From: Cycas panzhihuaensis
Taxonomy: Eukaryota; Plantae; Cycadophyta
Length of the DNA stretch: 64,000 nt
NCBI GenBank assembly: GCA_023213395.1
Contig: CM041465.1
Coordinates: forward strand, 123,697,741-123,761,740
Reading direction: 5' to 3'
Position numbers and translations under genes: made by a program
In this document: piece after piece, positions 1 through 44,100 of the stretch
Numbering within the stretch: the first letter of the stretch is position 1
Layout of the letters: every line of letters begins with the position of its first letter
Notes under the pieces: model-generated
Database searches by the model: none
Told to the model about the DNA's origin: nothing
Seen by the model: only the letters and a program-made list of their open reading frames with translations

Positions 1-1533
1 TCTTGTGGACTGTATTAATTTTATGAATCAATGGCATTTAGAAGCACCAGATGACCAATTTGTTGTAAATAAATAGGTTGCAACAATTTGTGCTAGGTAA
101 GGTACTTGAGCCAAATGAAAAGACAATTACTGCTCTTAAAAAGAAAACATATCCATTAGTAGAGATCTAATGGAAAACATTAAAAAAGCGAAGACACTTA
201 AGAAAGCATGGGAGGCTATCATGTCTATCTTTGAGATGAAAAATGATGCAAGGATCATAATTTTAAATAGTCAACTTTACACTCTTAAAATGACAAGTTC
301 ACTGGTTGGGCTTCTCTAAATGGTAAAAGAAATCATAAATTAATTGAAGAATACTAGGGAGACTATCAATGATAAGGACATCATTGTTACAATATTGAGG
401 AGTTTGTTGAAGAAGTTTCAAAGCTTTATGATGAGTTTTTTATTTTTTTTGTTAGACAAAATGGGAAATATATCTTTTATTATGTTAGAGGCATTTCTAT
501 TATAACGACTAAATATTAAAGGATAACATTGTTAGTGCATTTTCAACAAAGTGAAAAGGGAAGAAACCTTTAATTTTGAAGAAGGTGGTGACTAAAAAAC
601 AATAATAGTCTACTTAGAAGGGGCAAACAAAGTTGTGTTATTGCTACAACAAACTAAGCCATTTCAACAAAGATTATAAGAAGTAGTAGGTTGATTAGTA
701 GGAGAATGGAGATTAGTAGAATCAAAGGAAGAAATTACAGGTAGGGCACATTTCTAAATAGTCAATTGACTCAAGTAACAAGGAAGAAAAGCTCTTCATG
801 GCAACTTCACTAATAAATCCAAAAGGATACGATGTCCAATACATTGATTCAATAACTTAAAGGCACATGTAGTTTCCATATTCATGCATAAGCCTAAGAT
901 GAAATAATCAGTAAAAATAATTATCAAGTATCTCAATAGCACTATTAGATATGATCTTCACCACAGGTTATTATATGATCATAGGTTTATTGATTGCATA
1001 GGCTCAGATTAGACAGGATGTATATATAATAAAAAGTCTACTTTAAGATATACTTTTAGTTTGGGTATTGTGGTAGTTACATGGTGGTTAGAAAAACAAT
1101 CAATAATATTTCTTTCCACTGTAGAAACATAATAGAAGATAGCTGTAGTAAAAACCTATGAAATAATTTGGCTTCGAAGGTTACTTTAGGACTTATAAAA
1201 TAAACAAGTTGGTCCCATAGAACTATTTTGTGACAATCAAAGCACCACTCAAATGACTAGAAATTCAAGGTTTCATGGTAGGACTAAGTGTATTGAAACA
1301 CAACATCATTTCATTAGAGAGTTAGTACAACAAGGAGAACTAGAGTTAGTCTACTATAGCATAGAAGAACTACTATAACAATGAGAAACAAGTAGCAAAT
1401 ATATTCGTAAAGATATTAAACGAGGTAAAATTTAATAAATTCATAGACAAACATAGTGTTTCTCTAAATGGGCATTATAGAGGACAAATGTTGGGAAATT
1501 ACCCATCTGAGGATAATACCCAAACCTATTATA
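1..1533 (+). mobile_element. Copia-1: degenerate, internally deleted Ty1/Copia (gag, start of protease, RT C-terminus/RNase H, start of 3' LTR at ~1489)
   Basis: Gag-like KNDARIIILNSQLYTLKM (~240-295). Protease start YIDSIT*RHM (~839-869) joins directly to RT-end VSIFMHKPK (~870-898). RNase H motifs KKST..YTFSLG and LFCDNQSTTQMTRN...FHGRTKCIETQHHFIRE follow. A purine tract AGAGGACAAA precedes TGTTGG at 1489. Confidence 0.8.
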
Positions 1534-2066
1534 TGTTAAAATTTAAAATTTAACCTTAATACCATATTAAAATGTAGTCATTATGTGCAACAAAAGTATA
1601 TCAAATATATATAATTAATGAATCATATCATGAAGAATTTATATAATCATGTATGTATGTAAGATTAATATATCAAATAATAATATAAATCATAAAGTAT
1701 AAATATATCAAATATGCACCACAAGATAGACAACAAATTTATATGTAAAAAGCCTAATGTGAGAAAAAGTACTGAAGAAAGTTAGAGTTAAAAGCTCCTC
1801 TTTAAATATTAAATAGTTACATCTCCAAATGAGTCATTCCTCTCGATCGTTTTCAAATTCTCAAATGGTGTGTGTATATATTTATATGAATAATTTCCTC
1901 ATGAATTGCCGAAAATATCTTTTGAACCTCTTCATCATTCAATAAGATGTTTACTTGAATAATTGTGTATATCACATCTATTAATACTTTTTGTAAGTAA
2001 GATTTTGTGTAAGTCCACTATATCACATTAAACATTAAATATGTGAAATTATCACATATTATAACA
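1534..2066 (-). repeat. Uninterrupted reference LTR of the non-autonomous family
   Basis: TGTTAAAA...ATAACA termini. PPT complement immediately to the right. Embedded PBS complement CTTAATACCA at ~1555-1564. Confidence 0.85.
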
Positions 2067-2903
2067 CTCCCCCTTAATGTTTAATATTTTCAATCTTCAA
2101 TTTATATCCTCATTCTTGGTCTTCATCTCTTCTATTTTTCCTATATGTTAGTATTTGTAAACCCATTAACATATCATCTGTAACCTATAAATTTGTCAAT
2201 ATCATGCATGTTTCCTATAAGCAATTAATCTATAACCATCTATAATCATCTGTGATCATTAGTGACTAACTCTGAGCAACTATGACTAACTATGAATAAC
2301 CAACCTATAAAATACATGCATAATAATCATCAATTAATCAACAAATCAATCTCAATTTTACAACTCTCACTTGTCATATTTATATGAAGTTTTCTCAATA
2401 ACTTCATATTGTCACCTATAAAACTATTGTAAACATTAAAATTGTCAAATTATCATCTCAACAATCTTATGAATAAAAAATATTACTGATGTACATATAA
2501 AACAACCATCTACTGAAATATATAAATAACCAACGATCGTAATCATTAGTTCTATAGGATGTATTTCTTGTATGTGATTCATCAATAAATATAAACAACA
2601 CTTAATTATTAGACAAAATATTGTTACAAGAGTAGCATAAATATCTCTCACCTCTTGCATACAAAAATAATAATACCACAATATGTATTATACAAGAGGG
2701 GCCTCATTCATCTCACCACTTGTATACAAGTAAATAACTTGTGTGCTATCTTTATTAGCATTTCTACACACTTGTAATATTCTTTTGACAACTATTAATC
2801 TTATCAATATCAACAAATCAATAATCTAAACATATTAACTCTAGGAATAAGGCATACTACTTAGCCGTTATTAAATTATACAAGTATGTTACTTGTTTGG
2901 CTT

Positions 2904-3275
2904 TGTTAGGGATCCAACCCATAACTTACATTCTCTTACATTCTTTTATATCTTCTACTTCTTCTCTCTCTTATATCTTCTATTTCTTCTATTTTCTTAA
3001 TATCCCACATGCATAAGTAGAAGGTTATGTAGTTGTCGTTGAGTACTATATATATTCATATAATATCCCACATGCATAAGGAGGAGGTTGTGTAGTGAGC
3101 ATAAATCCATATATATATTTACGTAATCTTTAAAGTAGGGTATCTAAAATATCATTGTTATTGCATATAATTGGGAGGTTGCCCCCTTGAAGGGTATTGT
3201 AATACAAGTGCTCTTTTGAAGTTATTTGCATGTTATACTGGTGTGCAATTATTATTAAGGAGTGGTTTCCTACCA
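2904..3275 (+). repeat. Gypsy-1 5' LTR
   Basis: Direct repeat of 16194-16564, followed by the PBS. Confidence 0.92.
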
Positions 3276-4235
3276 AGTGGTATCATAGTGGTCGATTCAT
3301 ACCATGTGGAAGAGTTAAGAGTATTAAATAGTTAATTTTTTTTCCATCAATTTTTTCTCATCAATACCTATTCTCATTTAATTTCAGCTTAGTTACTTTA
3401 CTTTTTAGGGGTAGATAACACTGCAATTGGGCAACTACCCTAACACTACCACCGGGCAGTTTTCTTTTGCATTTAGATAGAGCCTATGCCTGGGGTCTAT
3501 AAATATCATAATGATCTATCATTTTAGGCTAAGCACTTTATGGCTTTTCTGTCCCTTGTGTGAAAGACTAGAGATCATACTCCTGATTAAGCCTTAGATA
3601 GAACTCACCTACGGAATTACACCTCTATGTACCTATAGGTATATAGGAAAACCCCCTAGATGGGCATTCCTAGTATAGGTAACCATAAGAAACCTATTGA
3701 CTGTCTACAATTTGTAGTGCACCAATAAGTCGTTAGCTTTAAGAAGTTACTCTCCACATACCCTAGAGACGGGGTAGTAAGACTACAAAGTAGAGTGTTT
3801 GCTTCTATAAGTTGATACTATTTACAACTAGGATCAGTATATCGAAGGGCCTACAAACCAGACAAACCTATACCTAGTGTTCATGGTCAATCTATTAGTG
3901 GTTTGTGCACACCTAGTCAGTCAGTGAGTCAATCATCATTAATTTTTTAAATCCAATGTGTCTAGCCAATTTATCATCAGTTCATGCATACATAGTCAAT
4001 TAGTCAATCAGTAACCAAAAGGTAAAAAAAACTAAAAAGTAAAAAGTAAAAAAGAGAAAAGCAAAAAGTGAAAAAAAGAAAAAACAAAAGTAAAAAGAAA
4101 AAAAAAAAAAGAAATAAATAAACAAATCTATATTACCTCATTGTAAAACATTGAGGATAATAGTCTATAGACACCCCGTCAAATCCTTTTCATTCACATT
4201 TACCAACTAGGATTCAACTTAGGTCTTGTGAATAA

Positions 4236-26675: not shown

Positions 26676-28329
26676 AAATTTTACTCTGATACCATATTGA
26701 AATATACTCATTATACAAAATATAAGTATGTTAAACATATATAATCAATAAATCATATTATGAAAAATATATACAATTCATATAATGTAAGATTAACATA
26801 TCAAACAATAACATAAATATAAAGTATAAACATGATAAAACATCAATAAGCATACACCATAAGAAAGAATGAATTTATAAGTCAAAACATAGTGTAAAAA
26901 AAAACCACGAGAGAGTTGAAATTATAAGCTCCTCTTTAAAATATTAAATGATTGCATCTTAATTCTTAAATTCTTAAGTAGTTTGTATACATGTTTATAA
27001 ATTTGTTACCTCATAAATAGCCTATAAAATTTTTTGAACATTTTCATCATCCAATAAGATGTGTACATGAATAATCATGCTTATCACATCTATCAATGCT
27101 TTTAGTGAGTGAAATTTTATGTGAATCCACTATTTTACATTAAACATTAAATATATATAGATATCAAATATTCAAATACTCCCCTTAATATTTAACGTCT
27201 TCAAGTCTTCAATTAACCTTGATCTTCATATCTTTTGCTTTCCTATACATTGAAATCTATGAACTTATATCAAATTTACATCAAACTGAATAAAGATGCA
27301 TCACCTATAATATGTAATCAATTGTATCAACTATGATCATCAGTGACCAACATAATCATCCACGTGTAAAATGCCTATAAAACTAAACATCAATCAACCA
27401 AACAACTAATTTCAATTTTATGATATTCACTTGTCATGTTTATATGAAATTTTCATTTTAATAACTTTATATATTCACCTATAAAACTGTTGTAAACATC
27501 AACATTGTCAACTTGTGATCTCAATAATTTCAACTAAAATGATTATCGATATCCATATAAAACAACCATTAACCAAAATATATAGATAACTAGTTGTTAT
27601 AATTGTTAATTCTTTAAAATATGTGTTTTATATGTGATTCATCAACAACCAAAACAACAATTAATTATTAGATAAAACATTGTTATAAGAGTAACATAAA
27701 ATCTCTCACCTCTTATATATGAAAACAACACAATCTGTATATTGTACAAGAGTAGCCTTATTCATTTTGTCTCTTATATACGAACAAATAACTTGTGTAC
27801 TAATTTTATCAATGCTTTTATACATATCAATAACTTTTTTTTTGCAACTAATAAATAATTCATCAACATCAACAAATCAATCATCTAAACATACTAACTC
27901 CAAGAATAGGGCATACTACATGACCAAAATAAGTTAATTGTAAGAAGGTAACATAAACTAAGTGTTTTCATGCCTCTTGTCATACATGTCAAGTCAAATT
28001 TTCCACAGACAAACATATAGATTTGATACTAGTTGTATAACCTCAACAACTGAATTTGGTATGCCAATATATGAGACTTTTTCTCTGTCTCATATATAGC
28101 TGAAAATAACATCATTTTAACTCATCTCTCCAACAAATAGACACTGCAAATAAATTAGACCATTCATCGATTATGAAACAAATGGTGTCATCATCATCAT
28201 CTTTAATTCAAATAAGTGTCCAATAAACAAGGTAATCAATGCATTTAACTAGTGATCGCAATTCTATTGATCAAATGTGTAAATATCAAGCAGGATTTTT
28301 ATCATATTCAACATATTAAGATTTTCGTA

Positions 28330-30670
28330 ATAAATTTCACTAAATATATTATACATCTTTAATTTTTTATCGGTTATGCACCTTAAACAATCATTAATGA
28401 ACCTTAAATACCTTCATTTTAAATTAAACTTCTTTTATTTATTATCTATAATCAATAACATTATCATGATCTTTGGAACCTTTTAAAACATTGAAAAATA
28501 TCAAAAGTAGATCTGAAAGAGGTCATAAAAAGCATCTTTTATGAAGTCAAAAGCATGTTAAAATTTACTTATTAAAATCTCTATTATCTAGTCTCTAAAA
28601 CATGCTTTACAACCGCTTGTTTTGACTGTCCCAAAATATCTTTCTAATGCAACTAACAATACATGAATTTGACATTCTAATAAAAATTTACATTCAAAAG
28701 ACTATCAATGTGTTATTAAAAATTAAATGTTCATAACAAATTACATTTAGCCCCTTCCGTTAGGTTGTTGGTTACTCAAATTTTTTTATATGACCATCTG
28801 CTTAGGCTAAGGGTCCTAACATGGATTCTAGATTTTATACAATCAAGTTAAATCCACTTTTACATATGCAAAAAATTTTAAGTACACCTTGCAAAATTTC
28901 ATGTCTACAGAATCTAAAATATTATTAAAAATAATTTAATTAAACACACACTTTGTAATTTTTTTTATTTTGATGAAAAATCTTTGTAAAACCTTTCTAT
29001 ATGGCAATATATTCTTTTAGGCATATATGTCGATTTCTTCATGGTGAACTCCTTTCTCAAAAGGGCAATGTGATTTCCTCTTCCAAAATTAAATTCCATG
29101 GGTAATTACAGTTGTGCCATTCATGAGTGATTACATCGATGGCATTCTTTATAGAGATCTTAAATAAATGGCAACTATGATAGAGTTCTTCAAATATGAT
29201 TTCTTCATGGCTTATGTCTTCAACACATCGAGCCACACTTCGTTTATGATTTTGGGCTCATTGATGTAGGGATTCTCCAAGTTCTATTACTTGAACACTT
29301 TCGTTTCGACAAAAATCTTCATAAAAAAGCTAGATAGTAAGCAAGGTCAACGTTCATTGTAGAAAAGGGCGATTCTCCAAAACCTCACACACAAACAACC
29401 AAGCTCCACAACTTCACGCATGTATTTTCCTTGTGGATATGACTATAGGCATGTGCTTTATAGTGAGTACGTTCCACAGGTGGTGTCATCAATCATCAAA
29501 TAGGTATCAATCATCAAATATCATGTGGTGTCATCAATCATCAAATAGGTATCAATAAACTATATGATTATTAATATTTGATAAGCAAAACTCTTCATTA
29601 GAACATATCTATTAATTTCAAATGGAGATTTTAATATGTCCAGTATATATAATATATCCACGTCAATTTTATATCAATATATCCCACAACTTCAATTTTC
29701 ATTAATTTTAAACATTTAAATATCATAAATGGGCCTTTAAATATTTATTTTTAAACAAAATTTCCTTTTTCATTCACCATCTATCATCAATAACATCATT
29801 ATGATCTTTTGAGCCTTTAAAAACATTAGAATATGCTAAAACAAATATAAAAAATGTCAAAAAATATAACTTTTATTAAATCAAAACCATTTTGTTGAAC
29901 TTTACCCATTAAAGTCTCTCTCATTTTATCTTTGAAATATGCCTTTTAATTATTTACTTTAATTATCTTAAAATCCTTTTTCTAATACAACTAATAGCAC
30001 CTAAATTTGATATTCCAATGAAAGATTATGATCAAAACAATGTCAGTGTGTCCTACAAAATAATGTGATCCTTAAAAAATTAGTTAAGCCCCTTTTTGTT
30101 AGGTCGTTGGTCACTTGACTTTCTCCATGTTACTGCCCGCCTAGGCTAAAGGGGCTAATGCAAATTCCAAATTTTATCCAATATAGTTAATTCAATTTTT
30201 TCACTTATAAACAAAACAATAAATCTGATTTATAAAATTTTGAGATCTATATTCATATTGGATTTAAAATCTGATTAAAATCTAATTAAAACAATGACAA
30301 ACTTTGTAATTTTTTTATTTTGATAAAAATTCTCTAGAAAAAAACTCATGCGCCTGCACCTCAAATTTTTCATCAAAAGCCTCTATATGAATTTCATCTA
30401 TAGACTCGTATAAATTTGCATTTTCGTTCTATGCTTTCCTATATTTAAATAATCTATGTAACATAAACAAAAAATTATTCATAGCATGAGCAATAGTGAA
30501 TTTGAGTTTATCTATAGGATGATCTCTCCTCCAATGGTACAAATCACTGTAGAAATCCACAACTTCACACAAGAATTTTCATGGGCAAGCAAACAATAGA
30601 GAGCACTTATGTAATGCTTCAATTGCACGTAGGGTTGATACAAAAAGCGTAGGTCGAGATCATCAATGGA
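28330..30670. repeat. Old ~1.2-1.35-kb internal tandem duplication in the non-autonomous element
   Basis: ~28440-28990 resembles ~29780-30340 (ATGATCTTT...TTAGGCTAA...CTTTGTAATTTTTTTATTTTGAT). ~29405-29500 resembles ~30557-30670. Confidence 0.7.
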
Positions 30671-32764
30671 CTACAGTTATACTACAGTTAGAATGGCTTC
30701 ATGCATAGATGCACAAACAAGATTATCACTTCACCACTGCATCGAATGGTGAGAGGACTTCAACAATGGAGGCAAAGTCGTATTTTGAATCCTTCTTAAA
30801 TGATGGTGTTTTGCATTCTTTAAAATAGGAATCAACACTTCGCCTTCTTATCAACCTTGTTTCTAGTCTTTCCAAGCTCTTTATTTCTTCAAAGGCAGAT
30901 CTACAAATGTATATGACGATAACATGCAATCCTTATATAGAGCAAACAAAGAATAAGAATGACTCAAAGACACCATACATCTCACACTCACACAGTGATC
31001 ACGATTGTGATTGAGCCTAACATGTAGTATAGCTACAAATCTTCACACATTGCAAACCTTAAATTTTATGCCTTTATTCATCTACCAAACCCTACATTTA
31101 AATACATTTCTTATTTCTAGTCACTTCATACCACATATTACATTGTACAAGTCTACTACCTATTTGGCATATTGATGGGATTATTGGATTGCATGGTTTA
31201 TATCCTACATCTTCTTTATTCAATCTTATCACTTTCAATTTCATAACTTCATGCACATCTCTCAATAGCAAAATATTACAAAAATACTTTTGACTGGGAG
31301 AAAATCCACAAGTTAAAGTGGACAAAAAAATTCCTTAAATAAAAATTAGATAAGAGAGATGCCATCAACAACACTTATCAATTTGTTTTTGCTAATTGTG
31401 AAGTTTAGTGAAATTACCAATCTTACAAAACTTCAGTCACGTCTACAATGGGTTAATTTGTATAGACGAACTCAATTGACAACAATACTTTCTCATCAAA
31501 TCTGGTGGATTTATTTAACACTAGCATGCCTATAAAATATGGATCCATATGTTTAAAATATATGTCCATAATAAATTCAATATCAATATACCATTAGTAA
31601 TATTGTTTTCAACATATTACTCTCATAATTTGTATGTGGTTTTATCTCATGTGTGTTGCTTTAATTTTCTCTATGCAAATCTCTTCATTATATGTGGCTC
31701 TCATCATCTTTTATATTACCTCAGATTTTTTATGACTTATCAAAATACACCTTAAATTAGCTCTGTATTGACTCAATTAGTTTAACAACTAGCTCATATA
31801 GATTTACAACCTGGTTCTACAAGATCTTTCACAACATGGCTCTTATATATTATGGGAGAAATTAAAATTTAACTATAATACCATATTAGAATGTTGTTAC
31901 TATGTGCAGTAAAAATATATCAAATATGTATAATCAATTAATCATATCATGTGAAATATACATAATTATGTATGTAACATCAACATATCAAACAATAATA
32001 CGAATCATAAAATATACACATATCAAACATGCACCATAAGATAGACAATATATTTATCCGTAAAAATTCTAGTGTGAAAAAAATCACAGAAGAAGACTAG
32101 AATTAAAAACTTCTCTTTAAATATTAAATAATACCTCCAATTAAATCCTTCCTCTCTCAATTATTTCTCAAGTTTTCAAATGGTATATATACATATTTAT
32201 ATAAATAATCTCCTCATAAATAACCTAAAATATCTGTTGAACATTTTCATCATCCAACACAATATTACATGAATAATCGTGCATATCACGTCTCTCAATA
32301 TTGTTTATGAGAATAGGCATATGCATAACATCATAGGATCAAATTAATCATAAAACCACATGAAAACAAATGATATTACACATGTACACAAGTTGATAGG
32401 TGGCAAACCCCTTCTGAGGAAGAAAAATCACCTCTTAAAGTTCTATTTTTATTAAGAATAACTGTAAACAGAAAACCAAACAGGTAAATCACCTAACATC
32501 TAAACCAGCTTTTGAAAAGGTATACAGACAGTCCTCCTAGATTCATGAAACCATTTCCTTGAATCTAGGAGATGAATTTATATAAAAAAATATTTATTGA
32601 AATGCAGTTTCACATTTCAACCACCTTTCACATAAGATAAATTAATAAATATTAAAGTTTAAATATTATGATAACTTAAATATACATTTAGACATGTGAC
32701 TTAAATATGAACTTTAAAAAAGAATATAAAGATTACATTAACATTCTAACATCCCCCTTTAATG

Positions 32765-35700
32765 TAAACTTTTGTGCTATAGAAAAAGAAGGTCTTCATC
32801 ATGGTGATCCCCCTTTGATGGAGACTTCTTTTATCTGCAACAGATCTCTGAGATTTAGAAACTTTACTTCAGTTAAAGACTTCATAAGAATATCAACAAT
32901 CTATAAATCTGTTGGACAATAAGACAAAGAAACAAGATTATCAGTAACTAAATTATCAATAAAATGCTAATATAATTCAATATGCTTAGTCCTAGAATAT
33001 GAAACTGGATTTGTAGCTATAGCAATTGCACATTGATTATCAACTTTAAGTTCAATAGAAGAGTTTAGAGACTGACCAATTTCATTTAGTAAAGATTTGA
33101 GCCAAAGTACTTATTTACCAGCTTCAACAAGTGCACGATATTTCGCTTTAGTTGTGGATAAAGTAAGTACCTACATTTTCTAACTAGACCAAGTAATAGA
33201 TGATGAATCTATAAAAAATACATAACCTGAAGTAGATTTGTGATCAGTTATATCACCTTCCCAATCAGAATCAGTATCTCCAGTTAAAGTTAGAGGTTTA
33301 TTACAAAAATTATAAGTTAAACCATAAAACAAAGTATGCTTTAGATATTGTAAAATATGTTTGGTTGCTTTCCAATGAGATTCATGTGGTTGTTGTATAT
33401 AACGGGAACATAAAGTGATAACATAGGAAATGTCAGGGCGGGTGTGAGTTAGATAGATAAGACTACCAATTAGTTGTCTATATAGTGTAGGATCACATAA
33501 AGGTGATGAACAATCAGTAGATAGCTTAACTCCTGATTGTAACAGATTAGATACGGGTTTAGTATTTTCCATGTTAAACTAATGAATTAAGTTTATAATA
33601 TACTTAGGTTGAGATATAGTTATATTTGAATAATTTTGATAAACTTGTAAACTAAGAAAGTAATGTAGTAGACCTAAATCAGTCATTTCAAATTTGTTTA
33701 ATAAAGTAGATTTTAGATGATGAATATTATTAGTTGATGATCCAGTAATTATAATGTCATTAACATAGAGGATTAGAATAGTAAGATTTTCATTTTCATG
33801 TTTAAAATAGAGATTTGGATCACTAATACATCTAGTGTATCCAATGTGAATCAAATAGTCATCTACTTTAGTATACCAAGCTCGAGGAGCTTGTTTTAAA
33901 CTATAAATAGATTTTTTAAGTTTGCAAACTAAATTAAGATTTTCAATAAATCCAGGTGGCTGAAACATATAGATCTATTCTTTAAAATCACCATTCAAGA
34001 AAGCACTCTTAACATCTATTTGGTGGATTTTCCAACCAAACTTGGCTACAAGAGCAATAATTATTTTGATTGTATTCATCTTTACAATAGGGACAAAATT
34101 TTCATTATAATTGATGCCATCTATTTGCGAAAATCCTTTGCAACAAGGTAAGCTTTATATTTTTCAATTGTACCTGTTGAGTTATATTTTATCCTATAGA
34201 CCCATTTACAGTCAACTACATTTTTACCAGGTGGGAGAAGAACAAGATCCCAAATGGAATTTTTAATTAAAGTATTAAATTCAGTCTGCATAGTGTCTTG
34301 CCATACATGATTGTTGATAGCTTGTTTAAATATTTTGGGATCATTATTGTCCATTATTTTTGCCATTAAGGTAAAATTAGTATATAGTTTTTGAGCACTT
34401 GTGCGTCTGGTATCGGTATGATTACCTACATCAGATCTAGCATCAGCAAGTATTTTTGTTGCCCAAACAGGTTGCTTATGAGTAATTGTTTCTGAAGATA
34501 CAGGTTGATTTGATGAACTAGCCTAAAGAGAAGGATCTATTTTAGTGGGTTTGGATATAGTCCAATTTTGGACTTGAGTTAATAAGGATTCCATAACCTC
34601 TACATCAGCTTGTTTATCAGAGGGATCAATCAAACAAGTGTTGGTTAACAAACTTTCAACAGGAAGTTCTACATAAGTAGATATTGAAGAATATCCTTCT
34701 TTATCAAATATTACGTTAGTAAAATAGAAATTTCATGTGTGACTGGATCCAAGAGTCTATAAGCTTTATTCTTTTCGTTGTATCAAACGAAGATATATTT
34801 TTGACTTTTTTTGTCTAATTTTTTGCGTTTTTCATGAGGGATGTGTCCCCATGCAATACTGCCAAAGATTCATAAATGATTGACATATGGTTTTCTTCCA
34901 TACTATTTTTATTCTAGAGTAACGTTCTGTGGACATTTACTAGGTAAATGATTTAATAAATAGTTAGAGCAATTAATTACTTCCGCCCATAATTTTAGAT
35001 CTAGATTCTTTGCATGTAACATATAACGAGTCATCTTAACCAGAGTACGATTTTTACGTTCAGCAACACCGTTTTGTTGAGGTGTGTATGCAATGAAATG
35101 TTGGAACCAAATTCCATATGATTTGCAGAAAGAAGTAAATTTTCCACTTAAATATTCCTTAGCATTATCAGATCGAAATATTTTAATTTTTGAATTTAAT
35201 TGATTTTCAACTAACGTTTTATATTCAACGAAAATGTCAAACACTTGACTACGTGTTTTGAGCATGTAAACCCAATATTTTCTTAAATAATCATCTATAA
35301 ATGTAACAAAATAATGAGAACCTAAGTATGATGTTACATGAAAGGGTCCACATATGTCAGAGTGGACAAGTTCAAGTGGAGCAATTGCTCTGAATTGAGT
35401 TTTATATGGAAATGGATCTATGTGTTGTTTACCTGTCATACAGGCTTTACAAACACCATAAACAGTGTTTAAGGGTAGTAGACCATGAACCATTTCATGC
35501 TTCTTTAAATATTACAGTTTGCCATAGCTTGTATGGCCAAATCGTACATGCCAAAGTTTGTTGACTGAGTCAGATTTGGCAATAAAGACACTAAAAGATT
35601 TTGTTTTGTTATTTTGAAGACTTGTTAGACTATAGAGACCTGTGTTATGATCAACAGGTCCTGAGGCAATACGTCTGAATTTGTTTAATGGTTCTTTAAT

Positions 35701-37035
35701 GATAAATTTATTTTTTTAGAATTCGACGACAAGGTCTTTCTGGGAGATTTGATAGACAGAGAGTAGGTTTAGTAACAAACCAGGTACGTAAAAGACGTCT
35801 TTGATTGAACCATCTTTTAAGATAACATCACCTGATCCTTTGACTTTAAGTTGATTACCACTTCCAAAAAAAATCTCTTCTTTAGAGTTCGTTTCGGATT
35901 GATAAGTGGTTAAATTTTTTTAGTATCTAGTCATGTGATGGGATGCACCAAAGTCAATGATCCACTGCGGTGGTTGATTTGAAGGGGCAACAAATGCAGA
36001 AGTTGTTACTACTAAAGAACAATTATGATTTTGACGATTTTGAGGTTATGCATGAGAATGGGATTGAGGATGAGATTGTGGTCAATTTTGCAATCCCTTG
36101 GAAGCTTTCCATGCTTTCGAAGCTATTCTACTTCTATAGATATCAATAGTGTGACATTTTTTATGACAATAAGCACAACTAGTGTTCTGAGAATGAGTTA
36201 CGTTATTCCTATGAAAAAACTGATTAGAAGTATTCTGATGTTTAGTAGGTCTAAAATACTTAACATTATTTTGTGAAATGGTTGGTGAATCTCTATGAGG
36301 TTTCTGAATTTTTAGATTATTATAAAAATTATTCTGTTATTTATTTTTAAATTATAGCTTAGTTTTAGAAAATAAAGCCTGTGAAGGATCTTTTAAGACA
36401 CATGTTTGGATTAACATTATCTGATGTTCAATCAGTTAGTTTGTTAACTGATTGAATGTTATAGGAGAGTCACCAGCTTGTTGTCTGGCAGTTTTATAGA
36501 GATTAAAATGTTTTGGTAGTTTATTAACTATAAGACGTACGAGTGTATCATCGTCTTTAACATGCATAGTTATTTTTTCAACATCACCTACTTTAGTTTT
36601 AGATTTGATGCAGTTATCTAGATCTTTATTAATTAATTAAATTTTACTTAAAAAGTCCTCAACGTTAGAAATATCATCAAAAGTAAGGTCATATAATTGT
36701 TGTTCTAAGATAGCCACTTAATGTGTATCAACCTTGTCATATTTTTCTTGCAAGATTTTTTAGATAGTGGCTAAGTCATCTGTTTCAGAAAATTATCGAC
36801 TGATTTCTGGTGAGAGTGAGTTTAATATAGTGCCTAAGGCTATATCTGAGTTTATCAGATATACCATATAACTCTCTGTAGCATCTTCTTTTAATTTTTA
36901 AAATTCACATGTCACATATCACAATAACTTTTGTTGTTTGAGCTGATGGGATATGCGATTCCTCCAGTCAGCATAGTTTAAGCCGGCTAATACTAGAATT
37001 GGAACGTAGGTGATTGTCCCTGGTATTAATACCAT
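32765..37035 (-). pseudogene. Copia-4 gag-pol pseudogene
   Basis: Minus-strand ORFs 34909-35493 (VHSDICGP, QQNGVAERKNRTL), 34121-34366, 33579-33968 (LKQAPRAW), 33180-33572 (RPDISY, DSDW). Gag start MVLIPGT...NYADWRNR at 37035. Confidence 0.9.
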
Positions 37036-38422
37036 ATTAAGAGTTATGAGGTTTAATTGAAGATGAAAAATATAAAGGTGATTGAAAAAATAATTACTTA
37101 CTAAAAATACTAACTATTAGATTAATTTAATAGGCATAATTGTAATATACTTGCTTTTAAACAAATAATAACATGTTCTTAAACAAATATCCTCCTTAAG
37201 AAATAATCCCTTTTGATAAACAATCCTCTTTGATAAATAGTCTCCCTTTGACAAACAAATTAGTTCTCCTTACTCTCAGAAAATGAACAAATCCTTAAAG
37301 AAATAAAAAGTCCCCCTTGATTAAAACAGTCTTAATAAAAAAATTTCCCTTAAAAAATAAATATTTATTAAAAAAAAATTATTGATTATCAAGCAAATTA
37401 AATTAAAAAAAAATTTAATGATTAGAACATAACTCTAATATTGAAAGAGATTAAATATCCAAATATTTAATGGGGATTATACTAAGATTTTATTGATTAA
37501 AAATAAAAATTTAATTGAAAAAGATATTAATATATTAAAGAGATATTTTGTAATGGAAAGATACGCTTTTTTTTTTTTTTTTTTAATGTTGAAATAGAGG
37601 GAGATTAATATAGGGAGGAGATTAAAGGAAGGTTTATATCATAATTAAATGAAGTTATAAAGGGGACTAATTTAGCATTAAAAAAATATAGTTAGGGAGG
37701 GTGATTATAATAAATATAATAAAAAAAGGATTTGATATAATAATCAATATAAAAAAATAAAATAAGTGTATTGTTTTATAATAAGAGAGGGAAATATATA
37801 ACGAGTGTTGATTTTGCCTAAGTTGATTAGGCTGTAAAAAGTATGTATATAAAAATATATAATATTGAGAGGGGGTTAGACTTAACAATAGAGAATATAG
37901 TGAATTGATTTAAGTTTAAAATGTAATAAAATTTTGATTATTAAAAAGTATTAAGAGTAGAGGATTCGTATTATTTTGTAAATCAAATATTATGGGAATG
38001 AATTAATAAAGTATAGGGGGGGGGGGGGGGGGGTAATTTAAATTTAGCCTAAAGTTCAATTAAAAGAGATTTTAAATAACTTATTAATGTGATTAAGGGG
38101 AGTGTAAACTCAATCTAATAAGGGGTATTAAAATTAAATCGAAATGTAATAAGGGATGGGGGGTATAGTTTTATTTAAAAGAAAATAAAAAATGAGCGGA
38201 CGGACCCGACAGACAATTTCGTTTTAATAAATAAAATTAAAATTAAATCAAAATAGAAATCAGGGAGGAGGGGGGGGGGGTTAGGGTAGAAACCCTACCT
38301 ACCTGGTTCATTGCAATCGTGGTAGCGGCGCTTTCTTTTTTTTTTAGGTTGTAGTTGCAGGATGATGGAGGCAAAGACAGATCGACTTGTTTGATGTTGG
38401 ACGGCTCTCGCTCCTCTGTACA

Positions 38423-39439
38423 AGTTTGGACATTGGCAGACAGGAAGTATTAGCTGTAGGGCACTTCCTTAAGGTAATCTCTATTCTGATGGTGGTTCTA
38501 CAGTCTGGCAAAGAATCAGAACTAGTGAATTCCAACAGTGGTGCTTGCCCTTTGAGCCTTGCAATCTTTCATGCTGCTGCAGAGCTTTTTGAAGTTATGG
38601 TGACTGATTCAACTGCCTCCACTCTGGTTGCTTGGATTCCACATGCAGTGGAACTTCATAAGGCCTTGCATTCTTCTTCTCCAGGATCTAATAAGAAGGA
38701 TGCACCCACTAGGCTATTGGAATGGGCGGATGCTGTTGTAGTGTATCACAAAAAAGGAGCTATTGGACTTCTCAGATATGCAGCTGTACTAGCCTCTGGT
38801 GGAGATGCCCAAATAACTTCAACAAGTCTCCTGGTATCCGATCCAATGGATGTTGATAATATTATGGCTGATGCAACTGGAGGTCCAGAACTTTAAGTTT
38901 TGGAGACCTTACTTGGAAAGCTTGTATCTGATAAATTTTTTAATGATATTATTTTACGGGACTCTTCCATACCACAATTGATGACAGCTATGTATATTTT
39001 GGCATTTGCTACAGATCATCCGGGAGTTGCTACTGGTCTTGTTGATGAAGGGGCTGAGTGCAATTCTATGGTAGATTTGTTGTTAGAGCGTAGTCAAGAG
39101 CAATATCTTGTTGAAATGTTGTTGCCATCTCTTGTCCTTCTGATTACTTTACTTCGAAAGCTGCAGGAAGTTGCATCGTAATACAAAATTATTAAATGCA
39201 TTGTTGTGTTTACGTTGGGAAATCAGCCCAAAAGTTAGCTGCTCGTACAGCAGTTCTAGCATTTTCTTATCCTTACTCAACACTTGCATTGGGAGCTGTT
39301 TGACATCTTCTTAGTTTTGCTCTATCTTGTTGGTCTGTTTTTGGGTGGACACCTGGCTTGTTTCAATGCCTTCTAGAGAATGTTCCAGCAGAATGGTATA
39401 TGGCTATGGAAAAATGGTACTTCTTCGCTTAATGCTCTG
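38423..39439 (+). pseudogene. VIR: Captured, intron-free fragment of plant VIRILIZER (VIR/EMB2016, m6A methyltransferase complex subunit)
   Basis: Recognised from memory of the plant VIR protein: ELHKALHSSSPGSNKKDAPTRLLEW...GLLRYAAVLASGGDAQ, LRDSSIPQL, LLPSLVLLITLL, HRNTKLLNALL...EISPK, GWTPGLFQCLL, GIWLWKNG. One stop at 38894-38896, frameshifts near 39170-39240 and internal deletions. Confidence 0.9.
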
Positions 39440-39970
39440 ATACCATGTGAGAATAGGCATATGCATAACATCATAGGATCAAATTAATCATAAAACCACA
39501 GGAAAACAAATGATATTACACATGTACATAGGTTGACAGGTGGAAAACCCCTTCTGGGGAAGAAAAACCACCTCTTAAAGTTTTATTTTTATTAAGAATA
39601 GCTGTAAATAGAAAACCAAACAGGTAAACCACCTAACACCTAAACCAACCTTTGAAAAGGCATACAGACAGCCCTCCTATATTCATGGAACCATCTCCTT
39701 GAATCTAGGAGATGAATTTATACAAAGAAAGGTTCATTGAAATGCAGTTCCGCATTTCAACCACCTTTCACATAAGATAAATTAATAAACATTAAAGTTT
39801 AAACATTATGATAACTTAAATACACATTTAGACATGTGACTTAAATATGAACTTTAAAAAAAGAACATAAAGATTACATTAACATTCTAACACTGTTGAT
39901 AAGTAAAATTTTGTAAATCCCCCATATCACATTAAACACTAGATATGTAAAACTATCATATATTCCAATA

Positions 39971-40320
39971 TTATATGGCTACTTATCAGATTATTTAGAC
40001 AAAACAACATTTTTTTTATGGTTGACCTTGAAATGTGTATCAACACTCTCATAGTGCTATCTATATTTTCATGAATTCATTGATCCTAATGTTCATCAGC
40101 ACCAACACCCTCAATTATTTGCTCCCCTTCCATTATTTTCATTGTGTTCTTTGGATCTTTGACATTAACACTAATTATTCCCCTTCCATAGTTTTCATTG
40201 TGTTCTTTGGATCTTTGACACTAACACTTTAAATTTATCATTCATTCTAGAATACTTATTTTCTAAGTGCGGTAGGCAGGGTTCTACTAATTTTAACTCC
40301 ATCTTTAAGAATTTGTCACA
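39971..40320 (+). repeat. Probable remainder of the Copia-1 3' LTR
   Basis: Inferred from the TTATA TSD linking it to 1489-1533. The right boundary is a guess (a CA at 40319-40320). Confidence 0.35.
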
Positions 40321-41190
40321 AATTTAGTTGAAAATTTATTTACCAACACATAATGATAGTGGAATGCTTTACGGCATGTTTATTAGGGTATTTGTATGGA
40401 TGTTGTAATTTAAAACATCGCTAGAATCTTTCAAAACTATTTAGATCCATAATGTGAAGTTTGTCATTGAAAATAGCTTAAATCTTCCTTCAAATTTGCC
40501 TAGACACTTGTACTACAATGTTGGGACACTTTTACCCTTGAGATATTCGAAAAAATAAAAAATCTCTACTAAAAACTAAACTTATATATTGATTTTTTTG
40601 TCAAATTATTCATAGTTGTGTTCCTCAATGAGACACTTCTACGTCAATCACTTAGCTACTCACCAACACTTTTGACTATACATCTGAAGATTTATTTTTT
40701 TTTAACTCAAATTTTTACTCTTTTATTTATTTATTTACTTTTTTAACTCTTATTGTTTTATATCAAATTTTTTAAGATTCCATTATTGATACACATAAGT
40801 TTTCTGAATATTATTTAGTGTGGCTTATATCAAATGTCAAGTTATGAGTAGTTATTTTTACATATCAAGGCATAATCATTTTCTTGATACCAAAACAACT
40901 TTGATTGCCCTCAACTTCTAGCAACACATTCATAGAACAATTATAGATTTCTCAAGTGATTCTATTTACCCTAATGATGATGCAATTTTAATTTATTGCC
41001 ATTGATCAATTTTGGCAACACTTGTTTTGTCATCCAATTTTCTCAATTGAACTAAACCATTTGGAAATATTTATTAGATTATGTAAGGAGTTAACTAACA
41101 CATCTTTAGTTTTCTTGGGTTGGTTCTAAACTTTTTGCCATACAATAATACTTCATCATTTTTCAAAATTGTAGTGATCAAAAATAGCAA

Positions 41191-44100
41191 TGGATATAAA
41201 ATCACTTGCAAGTTCCAAATTTGACTGGTCAACTTGGTAGAGTTATAACATTTGTTTTAGGTATCCATTTAAGCCATTTAAAAAAAAAAAAAACGTAACT
41301 CTTTAAAAAATGCACATTTTGGTATAATTGATAATGCTAATTATTGCTTTATTCACAATTTTTTTTAGCCCAAAAGAAATCACCTAAGAGTCCAAAATAG
41401 TATTTTATGGTTATTTATCATTTTCATAACACTTTATGGGCATTATTTTTCTTAGTTAGGAGATTAGTTTTATTTATGTTCCTATAGTCCTCATGGTATG
41501 TTTAACTATCCATTGGTCAATTTTTGTGCAATTTATAAAACTTTCAAAAGCTTGCTAAAAATAGAAAGTTTTAGATTTAAAAGCCTTTCACTCCGAGTTA
41601 GTTTTTTAATTTTAGAATATGTTTGTTAAAAACTTTTGAGTGGCCAAAGGCCTCAACTTTAAAAACTTATGTATTGTAAAAATTCTTTTTTTTTTTTAGT
41701 TTAACAATTTTTGAAATGAAAAGCTAAAAATTTCACAAAAATAAGTTCTTGTGAAGTTTAGTTCTATTTTCTTTCAGGAGAAAGTTTTTCTTTGAATGCA
41801 TAGATTATTGAAGGAATCTCCACCTTGCCATCTAGTATTAGAGCATGCTTCAACTCTAGAAGGAAAGGAAAAGGAAGTTCACAACAAATTATTAGTGAGT
41901 TTTGTGTTTACCTTCTTAAATATATTTGAAAATTACTAGACGCAGATTGAGAGTGTTTGATGAAGGAAATTAAACAGTTTGATAGACAAAATAACAAGAA
42001 GAGGGAAAGCACAAATGAACAAGCATATACAAAAGCTTCAAAGATGGGACGAAGAGCTTGCAAAGGTGGAGTTGAAACTCACAAAATTTCTTGGGTGAAG
42101 AAAGAGAGTGAGGTGGCAGTAGATAAAAAGTGTTTAATAAAGTTTACCATTGGGCAAACATATCACGATGAAGTATGGTGCAATGTTCTCCCAATAGATG
42201 CATGCCATATACTATTAGGGAGACTATGGTAATATAATAAGAATGCTTATCATGATGGGAGAAAGAATACTTACATCTTTTGAAAGGATGGTGTGAAGGT
42301 TGGATTACTACTTATTAAGGAAAAAGGATAGACAAAGACTATGTTAACTACAAAAGAGTTCTTGAGGGAAATAAGGGAGATAGGGGCTTATTATGGCTTA
42401 GTGATGAATTGGGTGAAAAACAGTAGTAAACTAACACTGATATCATAACAAGTGGCAGAACTATTACAAGAATATATTGATATCAAGTCTAACAAACTAG
42501 TAAAGAATTTACCACCAAAGAGAGGCATCCAACATTAGATTGACTTGATTCCAGAGTTTGCACTACCAAATCAAACTACATTCAGGCTAAGCCCTAAGAA
42601 AAATTAAGAATTATGTTGACAGATTAGTGAATTAATAAAAAATTAGATGGTAAGAGAAAGTATGAGTCCATATGCCACTCCTGCACTCCTAAATCTCCAA
42701 AAAAAGATGGCTCTTAAAGAATGTGTGTTGATTGCAAGGCGATCAACAAAATCGTAATCAAGTATAATTTTCCAATGCCTTGAATGGATGATATGTCAAA
42801 TATTTTGGCAGATACATCCTACTTCACCAAAATAGACCTAAAAAGTGGTTATTACCATATTCAAATTCAAGAAAGGGATGAATGGAAGATAGCCTTCAAA
42901 ATGAGAGATGGGTTGTATGAGTGACCAGTCATGCCATTCAAGATGTCAAATGCCCCAAGTACATTCTTGAGGTTAACGAACATCACATTGCGACCATATA
43001 TTGGTAAGTTTGTAGTTGTTTATTTTGATATACAGTTGAACTAACAGGAAGTACCTATTGCACCCAAAGATAATGTTAGATGTGTTGAGAGTAAAGAAGT
43101 TGTATGTGAACTTAAAGAAATGCAAGTTTATGTAGAGTAGCCTAATATATTTGAGATTTGTAATATCTCAGAATGGGTTGAATATAGATGATGAGAAAAT
43201 TAAAGCCATCATTGAATGCCCTACACTCAACAATGTAATAGAGGTGAGAAGCTTCCATGGTTTAGTTGCATTTTACAGGAAATTCATCAAAATTTTCAAT
43301 GGTATCATTACTCCCTTAGCAAATTATACTAAGATAAAAGAGTTTGTTTAGAACGACACAGTAGACCAAAGCTTCAAGTTGATGAAGTAAAAGGTGATAA
43401 AGGCACTTGTATTGGCCTTACTAAATTTTAGAAGATATGAGGTAAATTACAATGCATCACATGTAGCTATGGGGACCGTGTTAAGTCAAGAAGGAAGGCC
43501 AACAATACATTATAGTAAAAAGTTGAATGAGGCAATAAAAAAGTACACCTATAGCATAGAGTTATATATTGTTATGTAAGAATTAAGGCAATGGTGACAC
43601 TATCTTATGCTCAAAGGACTTTATCTATTTATAGACCACTAAATATTAAGATATGTGAACACAAAAGAAGTTGAATATTAAACAAGCAAAATGAGTATCA
43701 TATCTCTTCAAAGATTTACTTTCACCTTGAAACACAAATCAAAAAAACAAAATCAAGTTACTAGCATATTAAGCAAAAGAGTAGCACTAATAACCACTAT
43801 GGTAAGTAAAATGGTTGGGTATGTGATGCTTTAAAAGATTTATATACTATAGTAAGTAAAATGGTTGGGTCTATGATGCTTTAAAAGATTTATATACTAT
43901 GGTAAGTAAAATGGTTGGGTCTGATGCTTTAAAAGATTTATATAATAATTTTAGTAGAGTTGTGGAACATTGAAAACATTTCTTAACTAATGGAAGTGGA
44001 TCCAAGTATGACACTTATTTTATGTAAGATGGATATATGTTGAAAGGAAAACAACTATATGTTCTAGTTGGGTCCATGGGGTACAACATTATACGATAAT

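What the first reader, a model, noticed from the sequence alone, without database searches (positions are those of the whole stretch)
38423..39445. Copia retrotransposon carrying an antisense fragment of VIRILIZER, the m6A-writer scaffold, in its 5' leader
Seen: about 1 kb of VIR-like coding sequence lies between the PBS and gag of a complete LTR-PBS-gag-pol-PPT-LTR element with a TSD, on the strand opposite to element transcription. Established: VIR is a subunit of the plant m6A methyltransferase complex (with MTA, MTB, FIP37, HAKAI), and TE-captured gene fragments can produce siRNAs that cross-react with the donor gene. Inference: every element transcript would begin with antisense VIR RNA. 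That could lower host VIR/m6A as a counter-defence, or shield the 5' LTR from silencing because silencing it would harm an essential gene. It could also be a neutral one-off capture.
Basis: partly seen in the sequence, partly recalled or inferred. Interest (0 to 1): 0.92.

Follow-up and report, generated by a model that had tools for sequence, protein, structure and literature searches.

The report
Dead Copia carrying backwards VIRILIZER fragment
An old, broken Copia retrotransposon of a gymnosperm (probably cycad) genome carries a backwards, intron-free, decaying 1-kb piece of the host's VIRILIZER (m6A-writer) mRNA directly behind its tRNA primer site; it looks like an ordinary neutral gene-fragment capture, not an anti-m6A weapon.

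Summary
Window 38414-39440 (+), possibly from 38387, matches residues about 676-1071 of plant VIRILIZER proteins (phmmer E 6e-66; tblastn 1e-110). It lies antisense in the 5' leader of a minus-strand Ty1/copia element that has LTRs, a tRNA-iMet PBS, a PPT and a 4/5 TSD. The fragment has no introns, two in-frame stops, frameshifts and three internal deletions. Probable transcriptome contigs of a related organism carry the parent VIR mRNA at about 95% nt identity. They leave the window exactly at the PBS, where VIR and PBS share 7 nt (GCTCTGA). This fits plus-strand strong-stop DNA mispriming on spliced VIR mRNA.

The functional reading is not supported. The element's gag-pol is shattered and its LTRs differ by 7.7%. 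The insert is CpG-depleted. No chimeric transcript appeared in the two probable transcriptome contig sets laid. In two related DNA contig sets the insert is covered by 0-9 distinct contigs per listed site, against 19-100 for pol and the LTR. The same junction and deletions do occur there in a few diverged copies, so it is not strictly a single copy. Small RNAs were not testable. Unchecked notes of this scan report similar antisense captures behind the PBS on other DNA of this genome. Published counts are about 400,000 captured fragments per gymnosperm genome.

Verdict: a new member of a known kind, of modest interest.

The parts
32301..32305 (.). Left target-site duplication, ttgtt
   Evidence: Read from the sequence. 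It matches ctgtt at 39893-39897 in 4 of 5 positions.
32306..32751 (-). 3' LTR of the Copia element
   Evidence: Alignment and blastn against 39446-39892: 93% identity, K2P 0.077.
32752..32763 (-). Polypurine tract (attaaaggggga on the minus strand)
   Evidence: Read from the sequence; it abuts the 3' LTR.
33579..34366 (-). Reverse transcriptase remnants (RVT_2), split over several frames
   Evidence: Pfam PF07727, E 6.5e-30 and 5.4e-06. Frames are broken.
34909..35493 (-). Integrase core remnant (rve)
   Evidence: Pfam PF00665, E 3e-11. It lies upstream of RT on the minus strand, which is Copia order.
35923..37035 (-). gag and protease remnants; the gag start is near 37035
   Evidence: Stop-to-stop frames contain gag-like and protease-like (DFGASHHM) motifs, recognised by eye and not Pfam-tested. 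Contig depth in related genomes drops sharply to the right of about 37120.
37036..38386 (-). AT-rich low-complexity leader between gag and the insert. It contains a G-run (38263-38280) and a telobox-like palindrome.
   Evidence: Composition: 25.8% GC. Short tandem repeats. Intermediate contig depth, and 86-87-nt length variants in relatives.
38387..39440 (+). Captured VIRILIZER mRNA fragment (residues about 676-1071), antisense to the element. Homology is firm from 38414. In-frame stops at 38897 and 39179. Versus the parent mRNA: deletions of 90 nt (39038/39039), 8 nt (39170/39171) and about 75 nt (39390-39394), and one extra base at 39230.
39434..39445 (-). Primer binding site TGGTATCAGAGC (tRNA-iMet type). 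Its inner 7 nt (39434-39440, GCTCTGA on +) are also VIR sequence.
   Evidence: Sequence. The parent transcript matches through 39440 and then continues GGACATTAGG, which encodes the NALRTLG of Ginkgo VIR.
39446..39892 (-). 5' LTR, with a TATAAAT motif near 39716-39724 on the minus strand
39893..39897 (.). Right target-site duplication, ctgtt
   Evidence: Read from the sequence.

Best explanation
This is a neutral gene-fragment capture made during reverse transcription of a Copia element. The plus-strand strong-stop DNA ends in the PBS copy ...TGGTATCAGAGC-3'. Instead of transferring to the minus-strand DNA, it annealed through 7 nt (TCAGAGC:GCUCUGA) to a spliced host VIRILIZER mRNA packaged in the particle. 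It was then extended by reverse transcriptase for about 1.2 kb towards the mRNA's 5' end, with internal jumps or later deletions of 90, 8 and about 75 nt. It then switched back to the element's minus-strand DNA in the leader. The result is LTR-PBS-[antisense VIR]-leader-gag-pol-PPT-LTR.

The chimeric element was copied a few times around the same period and was then methylated and silenced. It has since decayed like the rest of the family. It has no demonstrated effect on VIR or m6A.

Shown: donor identity, orientation, absence of introns, the 7-nt overlap at the PBS, decay, and rarity relative to the family. Inferred: the strong-stop mispriming route, the timing, and neutrality.

The confidence of 0.6 is for the whole statement, including the strong-stop route. 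A neutral capture by some RT-mediated route I rate at about 0.8.
For: Donor and orientation. The closest proteins are gymnosperm VIR: Ginkgo 83.5% aa, against 71.5% or less for angiosperms.

mRNA origin:
- A 4759-nt contig in organism A, from what are probably transcriptome contig sets, is colinear with the insert at about 95-96% identity. It carries the 88-90 nt and the 8 nt that the insert lacks.
- Two intron positions conserved in other plants' genomic ORFs fall inside the insert and are intronless there. They are Ginkgo residues about 712 and about 873, at window positions about 38537 and about 39020.

Junction: parent transcripts leave the window at 39440, inside the PBS, giving a 7-nt overlap. 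By simple arithmetic of my own, the chance of 7 nt or more at a random joint is about 8/4^7 = 5e-4. Only plus-strand synthesis on a sense, spliced mRNA gives an antisense, spliced insert abutting the PBS.

Timing: insert versus parent differs by 46-55 of 992 positions (4.6-5.5%), and LTR versus LTR by K2P 0.077. This is compatible with capture at about the time of this copy's insertion.

Neutrality and silencing:
- Stops, frameshifts and deletions in the insert; the longest gag-pol frame is 200 aa.
- CpG observed/expected is 0-0.09 in the LTRs and 0.23 in the insert.
- 10 of the 14 listed differences in the insert have T or A in the window.
- 0-9 distinct DNA contigs per listed site in the insert, against 19-100 in pol and the LTR.
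- No chimeric transcript contig was seen.

Context: about 400,000 captured fragments per gymnosperm genome, with no methylation advantage for carriers in Platycladus (PMC13477047). Microsimilarity-guided template switching has a median of 6 bp (PMC5131818). Unchecked notes of this scan report other antisense captures behind the PBS in this genome.
Against: - The inner junction (38387-38428) could not be resolved, because no canonical VIR-less copy was available. The second template switch is therefore not shown.
- Contig depths are not copy numbers, and the DNA contig sets are from related organisms, not demonstrably the window's own.
- A few diverged copies share the junction and the deletions. 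The chimera therefore survived at least some duplication, which a strictly dead-on-arrival product would not.
- No small-RNA or stranded RNA data of the host could be examined. Antisense function needs no ORF, so coding decay does not exclude it.
- About 26% of sampled 31-mers of the stretch are still identical to sequence in organism A. Cross-reacting siRNAs remain possible in principle.
- I found no published precedent for plus-strand strong-stop priming on mRNA in a limited search.
Confidence: 0.6

Rival explanations
1. Counter-defence. Transcripts of VIR-bearing elements supply antisense VIR RNA or siRNAs that lower host VIR and hence m6A. This would relieve the m6A-dependent restraint on retrotransposon RNA.
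For: - The structure places antisense VIR at the start of any element transcript.
- m6A restrains the Copia element ONSEN in Arabidopsis, and a demethylase promotes its mobility (PMC10686560).
- Orchid Ty3/gypsy elements acquired an m6A demethylase domain (PMC9289625, title only).
- VIR stabilises the writer complex (PMC11019739).
- About a quarter of sampled 31-mers still match VIR sequence of a related organism.
- A few copies share the capture.
Against: - VIR-bearing copies are rare against a family covered by 19-100 distinct contigs per listed site, so there is no amplification advantage.
- The element is coding-dead, old and CpG-depleted.
- Only parent-gene transcripts were seen in the two probable transcriptome contig sets.
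- Other host genes are reported captured in the same position in this genome (unchecked notes). Capture is massive and apparently indiscriminate in gymnosperms.
Confidence: 0.04
2. Epigenetic shield. siRNAs against the 5' end of the element would also hit essential VIR, so selection weakens silencing of carriers (epigenetic conflict).
For: The concept is published for maize (Muyle et al. 2021, as cited) and discussed for gymnosperms. The insert lies next to the 5' LTR.
Against: - CpG observed/expected is 0.09 in the 5' LTR, 0 in the 3' LTR and 0.23 in the insert.
- The differences from the parent are dominated by T or A in the window, which indicates long-term cytosine methylation of exactly this region.
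- In Platycladus, carriers gained no methylation advantage.
- There is no amplification.
Confidence: 0.03
3. DNA-level event. A VIR cDNA or retrocopy fragment was inserted as filler during microhomology-mediated repair of a break in an already integrated element, and the junction at the PBS is a coincidence.
For: Microhomology and either orientation are typical of end-joining filler DNA. The inner junction is unresolved. The internal deletions could be repair-associated or later events.
Against: - The break would have to fall exactly at the inner end of the 12-nt PBS with a 7-nt overlap.
- There is no poly(A), no 3' end of the mRNA and no TSD around the fragment.
- Other captures in this genome are reported directly behind the PBS (unchecked).
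- Several diverged copies share the junction.
Confidence: 0.1

Closest known systems
LTR-mediated retroposition and gene capture by template switching (yeast Ty1, Drosophila and vertebrates in Tan et al. 2016, PMC5131818; maize Bs1)
   Same: A partial, intron-free host mRNA copy lies inside an LTR pair. There is short microsimilarity at the fusion point: 7 nt here, against a median of 6 bp there. The product behaves as a non-autonomous element that may be re-copied.
   Different: In that model, switching between RNA templates would place the gene in the element's sense orientation (my inference; the passages read do not state orientation). In Drosophila the retrocopy replaced internal ORFs. 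Here the fragment is antisense, sits in the leader exactly at the PBS, and gag-pol is retained. This implies plus-strand rather than minus-strand synthesis on the mRNA.
Mass capture of exon fragments by TEs in gymnosperm giga-genomes (Platycladus orientalis study, PMC13477047)
   Same: A gymnosperm host, a fragment of a single donor gene inside a TE, decay of the fragment, and the discussion of epigenetic conflict.
   Different: That work is a genome-wide count without junction-level mechanism. In the passages I read, VIR is not named as a donor.
Retrotransposons that interfere with m6A: orchid Ty3/gypsy elements with an ALKBH demethylase domain (PMC9289625), and ONSEN relying on ALKBH9B (PMC10686560)
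   Same: A link between an LTR retrotransposon and the m6A pathway, with lower m6A favouring the element.
   Different: Those cases involve a sense, protein-coding, conserved domain or a host enzyme with experimental support. Here there is a decayed antisense fragment with no evidence of expression or effect.
Additional antisense ORFs in plant LTR retrotransposons (Vicient and Casacuberta 2020, PMC7264820; listed, not read)
   Same: Non-gag-pol sequence on the opposite strand of an LTR retrotransposon.
   Different: As I recall, those are conserved family-wide ORFs. This one is a broken host-gene piece in a few copies.

Membership tests
VIRILIZER / VIRMA gene family (donor of the insert) | Significant, colinear similarity to proteins that carry the Virilizer N-terminal domain and are annotated as VIR / EMB2016 | tested here: met
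   phmmer E 6e-66. tblastn E 1e-110 over residues 679-1071. The hits carry PF15912 and virilizer names.
VIRILIZER / VIRMA gene family (donor of the insert) | A functional gene: intact reading frame that includes the VIR_N domain | tested here: not met
   Only residues about 676-1071 are present. There are two in-frame stops, frameshifts and three deletions, and no Pfam hit on the fragment itself.
VIRILIZER / VIRMA gene family (donor of the insert) | Sequence relation to solved human VIRMA | tested here: inconclusive
   P0001 against 7vf2_A gives E 9.8e-06, but over 30 residues only and outside the captured part.
Ty1/copia LTR retrotransposon | Paired LTRs with TG..CA ends, PBS next to the 5' LTR, PPT next to the 3' LTR, and a 5-bp TSD | tested here: met
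   The TSD matches in 4 of 5 positions.
Ty1/copia LTR retrotransposon | Integrase upstream of reverse transcriptase (RVT_2) | tested here: met
   rve at 35493-34909 precedes RVT_2 at 34366-33579 on the minus strand.
Ty1/copia LTR retrotransposon | Autonomous: intact gag-pol | tested here: not met
   The longest stop-to-stop frame is 200 aa, and the domains are split over three frames.
Retrotransposon gene capture by template switching | The host-derived segment lacks the donor's introns | tested here: met
   It is colinear with transcript contigs. Two conserved intron sites are absent. The host gene's own introns were not seen directly.
Retrotransposon gene capture by template switching | Microhomology at both fusion points | tested here: inconclusive
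   There are 7 nt at the PBS junction. The inner junction at 38387-38428 is blurred by indels, and no canonical copy was available for comparison.
TE-borne counter-defence / anti-silencing factor | Carriers out-amplify non-carriers | tested here: not met
   0-9 distinct contigs per listed site in the insert, against 19-100 in pol and the LTR. Summed depth is 12-52 against 15,000-80,000. These are related organisms and the measure is rough.
TE-borne counter-defence / anti-silencing factor | The insert is expressed as antisense RNA or small RNA | tested here: inconclusive
   No chimeric contig in the two probable transcriptome contig sets of organism A. No small-RNA data were reachable, and the host individual was not sampled.
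TE-borne counter-defence / anti-silencing factor | A measurable effect on VIR mRNA or m6A | not testable with these tools
   This needs host RNA, m6A and genetic data.

The most novel reading that the evidence does not exclude
A small Copia sublineage in a cycad-like gymnosperm propagates an antisense VIRILIZER leader. Its transcripts or siRNAs dampen the host m6A writer and so relieve m6A-dependent restraint of retrotransposon RNA. It would be an RNA-level analogue of the demethylase domain acquired by orchid Ty3/gypsy elements.

A more modest variant is that plus-strand strong-stop DNA mispriming on host mRNAs is a recurrent and so far undescribed route. It would place antisense gene fragments directly behind the PBS in this genome. 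I rate that variant at about 0.4, with interest about 0.5 if true.
Probability: 0.04. Interest if true: 0.85.

Novelty: new member of a known kind. Interest (0 to 1): 0.3.

Why it matters
Gene-fragment capture by LTR retrotransposons is common, and massive in gymnosperms, so one more donor gene changes little. Two things give this case some value.

First, the junction is unusually legible. An antisense, spliced fragment begins inside the PBS with a 7-nt overlap. This points to plus-strand strong-stop DNA priming on a cellular mRNA, a route that differs from the usual minus-strand template-switch model. If the similar cases noted elsewhere in this genome are confirmed, it would be a recurrent mechanism that could be surveyed.

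Second, the donor is the scaffold of the m6A writer, and m6A is known to restrain at least one plant Copia element. That makes the locus a cheap test case for TE-host conflict over RNA methylation. The present evidence, however, points to a silenced and neutral relic.

Tried and rejected
- ESM Atlas look-up of the 169-aa ORF gave unrelated clusters and low recognition, so it was uninformative.
- Pfam on the insert ORFs found nothing. VIR_N is N-terminal and is absent from the fragment.
The cDNA of the closest VIR proteins and the context of the short VIR-like ORFs could therefore not be fetched.
- The search for homologous proteins with the 169-aa ORF found no gene-called captured copies. The best hit was 79% identical with partial coverage, and these hits are exons of VIR genes of other plants.
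- Other copies of the LTR, leader or insert within the window: none.
- Rfam over 30000-42000 found nothing.
- TRF on the leader found only short AT-rich repeats, although relatives show 86-87-nt length variants.
- Literature search for plus-strand strong-stop priming on mRNA, or for antisense capture at the PBS, found no direct precedent. The search was limited.
- LINE-type processed pseudogene inserted into the leader: rejected. The fragment is internal to the mRNA and has no poly(A), no 3' UTR and no TSD.
- Minus-strand template switch to VIR mRNA: rejected, because it would give sense orientation. A switch to an antisense VIR transcript was rejected because the fragment is spliced at sense-strand introns.
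- The host's own sequencing runs were not among those served. The best share of words was 0.26.
Contig depth is not copy number.

Full report
1. THE ELEMENT

A direct repeat pair frames 32306-39892. Alignment and blastn give LTRs at 32306-32751 and 39446-39892 with 32 mismatches in 447 aligned positions. Of these, 28 are transitions, and K2P is 0.077.

Read on the minus strand, the right LTR starts TG and ends CA. It is followed at once by TGGTATCAGAGC (39445-39434), the usual tRNA-iMet primer binding site. The left LTR is preceded on that strand by attaaaggggga, a polypurine tract. The flanks are ttgtt and ctgtt, a 4/5 target-site duplication.

Pfam finds an integrase core at 34909-35493 and RVT_2 at 33579-34366, both on the minus strand and in Copia order. 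Stop-to-stop frames show gag-like and protease-like pieces, and the gag start is near 37035. No frame is longer than 200 aa.

The element is therefore structurally whole but coding-dead. With K2P 0.077 its age is roughly 3 to 17 million years or more, depending on the substitution rate assumed (my inference).

2. THE INSERT IS VIRILIZER

The 169-aa ORF 38387-38896 (+) was scored against 1.84 billion representative proteins. Thirty-seven hits had E of 0.001 or better. The best was E 6e-66 at 78% identity, aligned to residues 677-829 of a 2367-aa protein.

The long hits carry Pfam VIR_N at their N-terminus. Where named, they are called Virilizer N-terminal domain-containing protein, or 'protein virilizer homolog' or 'embryo defective 2016'.

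tblastn of P0001 on the window gives one HSP only: residues 679-1071 on 38429-39439, E 1e-110. The closest proteins are gymnosperm VIRs: Ginkgo 83.5%, two unnamed transcript-derived proteins 81-82%, Taxus 80%. Angiosperms reach 71.5% at most.

VIR is a stabilising subunit of the Arabidopsis m6A writer complex (PMC11019739).

3. STATE OF THE FRAGMENT

It covers about 393 of about 2370 codons and lacks the VIR_N domain. It has in-frame stops at 38897 and 39179, and frameshifts between 39170 and 39395.

Contigs of organism A were laid on the window. These sets have 130,000-180,000 contigs and about 50 Mb in total, with longest contigs of 10-14 kb, so they are probably transcriptomes. They include a 4759-nt contig colinear with 38576-39389 and an 1858- or 2505-nt contig over 38429-38604. 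Over 992 positions there are 46-55 differences, which is 4.6-5.5%.

Relative to that parent mRNA the insert differs as follows:
- it lacks 88-90 nt at 39038/39039 (30 codons, LYEEGA...YDY in P0001);
- it lacks 8 nt at 39170/39171;
- it has one extra base at 39230;
- it lacks about 75 nt at 39390-39394 (25 codons, PTSLALGPKEACSVLCLLGELFPEE).

4. mRNA ORIGIN

The insert is colinear with transcript contigs. In addition, short ORFs called on genomic contigs of many other plants lose their similarity to Ginkgo VIR at two sharply clustered positions. One is residues 711-713 (13 cases) and the other is residues 871-873 (37 cases), which is where those ORFs run into introns.

These positions map to about 38537 and about 39020 of the window. 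VIR-homologous sequence continues there without interruption. The donor was therefore a spliced sense mRNA. The host gene's own introns were not seen directly.

5. THE JUNCTION AT THE PBS

The parent transcripts match the window through 39440 and then continue GGACATTAGGAGTCGG.... With the preceding AATGCTCTGA this encodes NALRTLGVG, as in Ginkgo VIR. The window instead continues TACCA and then the LTR.

The 7 nt GCTCTGA (39434-39440) therefore belong both to VIR and to the PBS. A random joint shows 7 nt or more of overlap with probability about 8/4^7 = 5e-4 (my arithmetic).

A spliced sense mRNA used as template yields antisense DNA. For that DNA to be part of the element's sense strand, it must have been made during plus-strand synthesis. 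The one plus-strand intermediate whose 3' end is the PBS copy is plus-strand strong-stop DNA. Its end ...TCAGAGC-3' can pair with GCUCUGA in VIR mRNA. Extension then runs from codon 1071 back to about codon 676, which is exactly the order seen behind the PBS.

This route is inferred. I found no published description of it in a limited search. The general principle of microsimilarity-guided switching is well documented, with a median of 6 bp (PMC5131818).

6. THE INNER JUNCTION

Protein-level homology starts at 38429. At the nucleotide level, CTCTGTACAAGTTTG (38414-38428) matches the parent's CTCTGTCCAGGTCT, with two transitions, one transversion and one extra base. A weaker match may reach 38387.

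Without a canonical copy the second switch point cannot be defined. Between it and gag lie 1.35 kb of AT-rich leader with 25.8% GC.

7. COPIES ELSEWHERE

No served run holds more than 26% of the sampled 31-mers, so the host's own reads were not available. Two large DNA contig sets, X3 (organism B) and X6 (organism C), were laid on the window.

In organism B (X3):
- a 285-nt contig spans 38229-38510 and so bridges the inner junction;
- a 311-nt contig spans 38844-39154, colinear over the 90-nt deletion;
- a 138-nt contig spans 39318-39453, colinear over the 75-nt deletion and reaching 13 nt past the VIR end into the PBS and LTR;
- three overlapping, distinct contigs over 38927-39154 differ from the window by 5-10%.

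In organism C (X6):
- two contigs cross the 90-nt deletion point.

The same captured and deleted fragment therefore exists in related genomes, in a few diverged copies.

At the variant sites listed in the insert, 0-9 distinct contigs are counted. At listed sites in pol and the LTR the count is 19-100. Summed contig depth is 12-52 over the insert, against 15,000-80,000 over pol and the LTR. The tool warns that depth is not copy number, so I use this only as an order-of-magnitude contrast. VIR-bearing copies are a tiny minority of a very large family.

The divergences are compatible with one capture followed by a few copies at about the same time. They are: insert versus parent about 5%, copy versus copy 5-10%, and LTR versus LTR 7.7%.

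8. EXPRESSION AND SILENCING

In the two probable transcriptome sets, every contig shown over the insert leaves the window at the insert's two ends. These are parent-gene transcripts. LTR contigs in X18 cover only about 39533-39839, and nothing shown bridges LTR, PBS and VIR. This is weak negative evidence, because organism A may lack the copy and contigs drop rare RNAs.

CpG observed/expected is 0 in the 3' LTR, 0.09 in the 5' LTR and 0.23 in the insert. Ten of the fourteen listed differences in the insert have T or A in the window where the other sequences have C or G. That is the signature of long-term cytosine methylation of the insert itself, and it argues against a shield. Small RNAs could not be examined.

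9. CONTEXT

TE capture of exon fragments averages about 400,000 fragments per gymnosperm genome, from thousands of donor genes. In Platycladus, carriers showed no methylation advantage (PMC13477047). LTR retrotransposons of rice and sorghum carry hundreds to thousands of captured genes, some with small RNAs (PMC3726574).

Notes from this scan, unchecked by me, describe other captures in the same genome:
- a Copia with an antisense Enkurin-domain fragment directly behind its primer site;
- a Copia with an antisense SAP fragment in its leader;
- an AGO4 fragment in a non-autonomous LTR element, with the genome judged 'probably a cycad'.

The cycad guess agrees with the Ginkgo-nearest VIR. If these notes are correct, the process takes many kinds of host mRNA, which favours neutrality for VIR.

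On the other side, m6A does restrain ONSEN in Arabidopsis (PMC10686560). Orchid Ty3/gypsy elements acquired an m6A demethylase domain (PMC9289625, title only).

10. VERDICT

The donor, orientation and position are right. The mechanism of origin is most likely plus-strand strong-stop mispriming on VIR mRNA (confidence about 0.6 for that route, and about 0.8 for a neutral capture by some RT-mediated route). Counter-defence and shield readings are unsupported, at about 0.04 and 0.03.

It is a new member of a known kind. The junction and the possible recurrence of antisense captures behind the PBS are the parts worth a follow-up survey.

Noticed in passing
window 32306-32751 versus 39446-39892: The LTR substitutions are strongly one-sided. 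In 24 of 28 transitions the 3' LTR has A or T where the 5' LTR has G or C, and GC is 26.8% against 31.1%. The cause is unknown.
   Followed up: partly
window 38263-38331: Just inside the inner junction lie an 18-nt G-run (38263-38280), a telobox-like palindrome ttagggtagaaaccctacc (38281-38299), and a PBS-like TGGTAGCGGCGC on the + strand (38320-38331) followed by a T-run. This could be a piece of another transcript or element captured together with VIR.
   Followed up: no
window 37122-38285: In two related genomes this leader segment has summed contig depth of roughly 100-3,600, against 10,000-80,000 for gag-pol and the LTR. There are also 86-87-nt length variants (joints at 37249/37337, 37639/37726 and 37708/37795). 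It is therefore specific to a subfamily, or not native to the family.
   Followed up: partly
window 38575-38619: The parent VIR transcript contigs of organism A branch here, with loose ends before 38575 (pyrimidine-rich) and behind 38619. This suggests intron retention or alternative isoforms of the host VIR mRNA.
   Followed up: no
window 39396-39445: DNA contigs of organisms B and C join 39396 to 39440 or 39445 with 2-5 other letters between. Some related copies therefore carry a further deletion of 43-48 nt next to the PBS.
   Followed up: no
window 34600-37100 and 39450-39840: This Copia family is extremely abundant in related genomes. About 27,000-28,000 contigs per run were laid on 5.8 kb. 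Short family-like contigs about 10% diverged also occur in the RNA-like sets.
   Followed up: no
same genome, other windows (notes s1-822539, s1-819444, s1-819445): Earlier notes report antisense Enkurin-domain and SAP fragments in Copia leaders, one of them directly behind the PBS, and an AGO4 fragment in another LTR element. Antisense capture behind the PBS may be recurrent in this genome.
   Followed up: no
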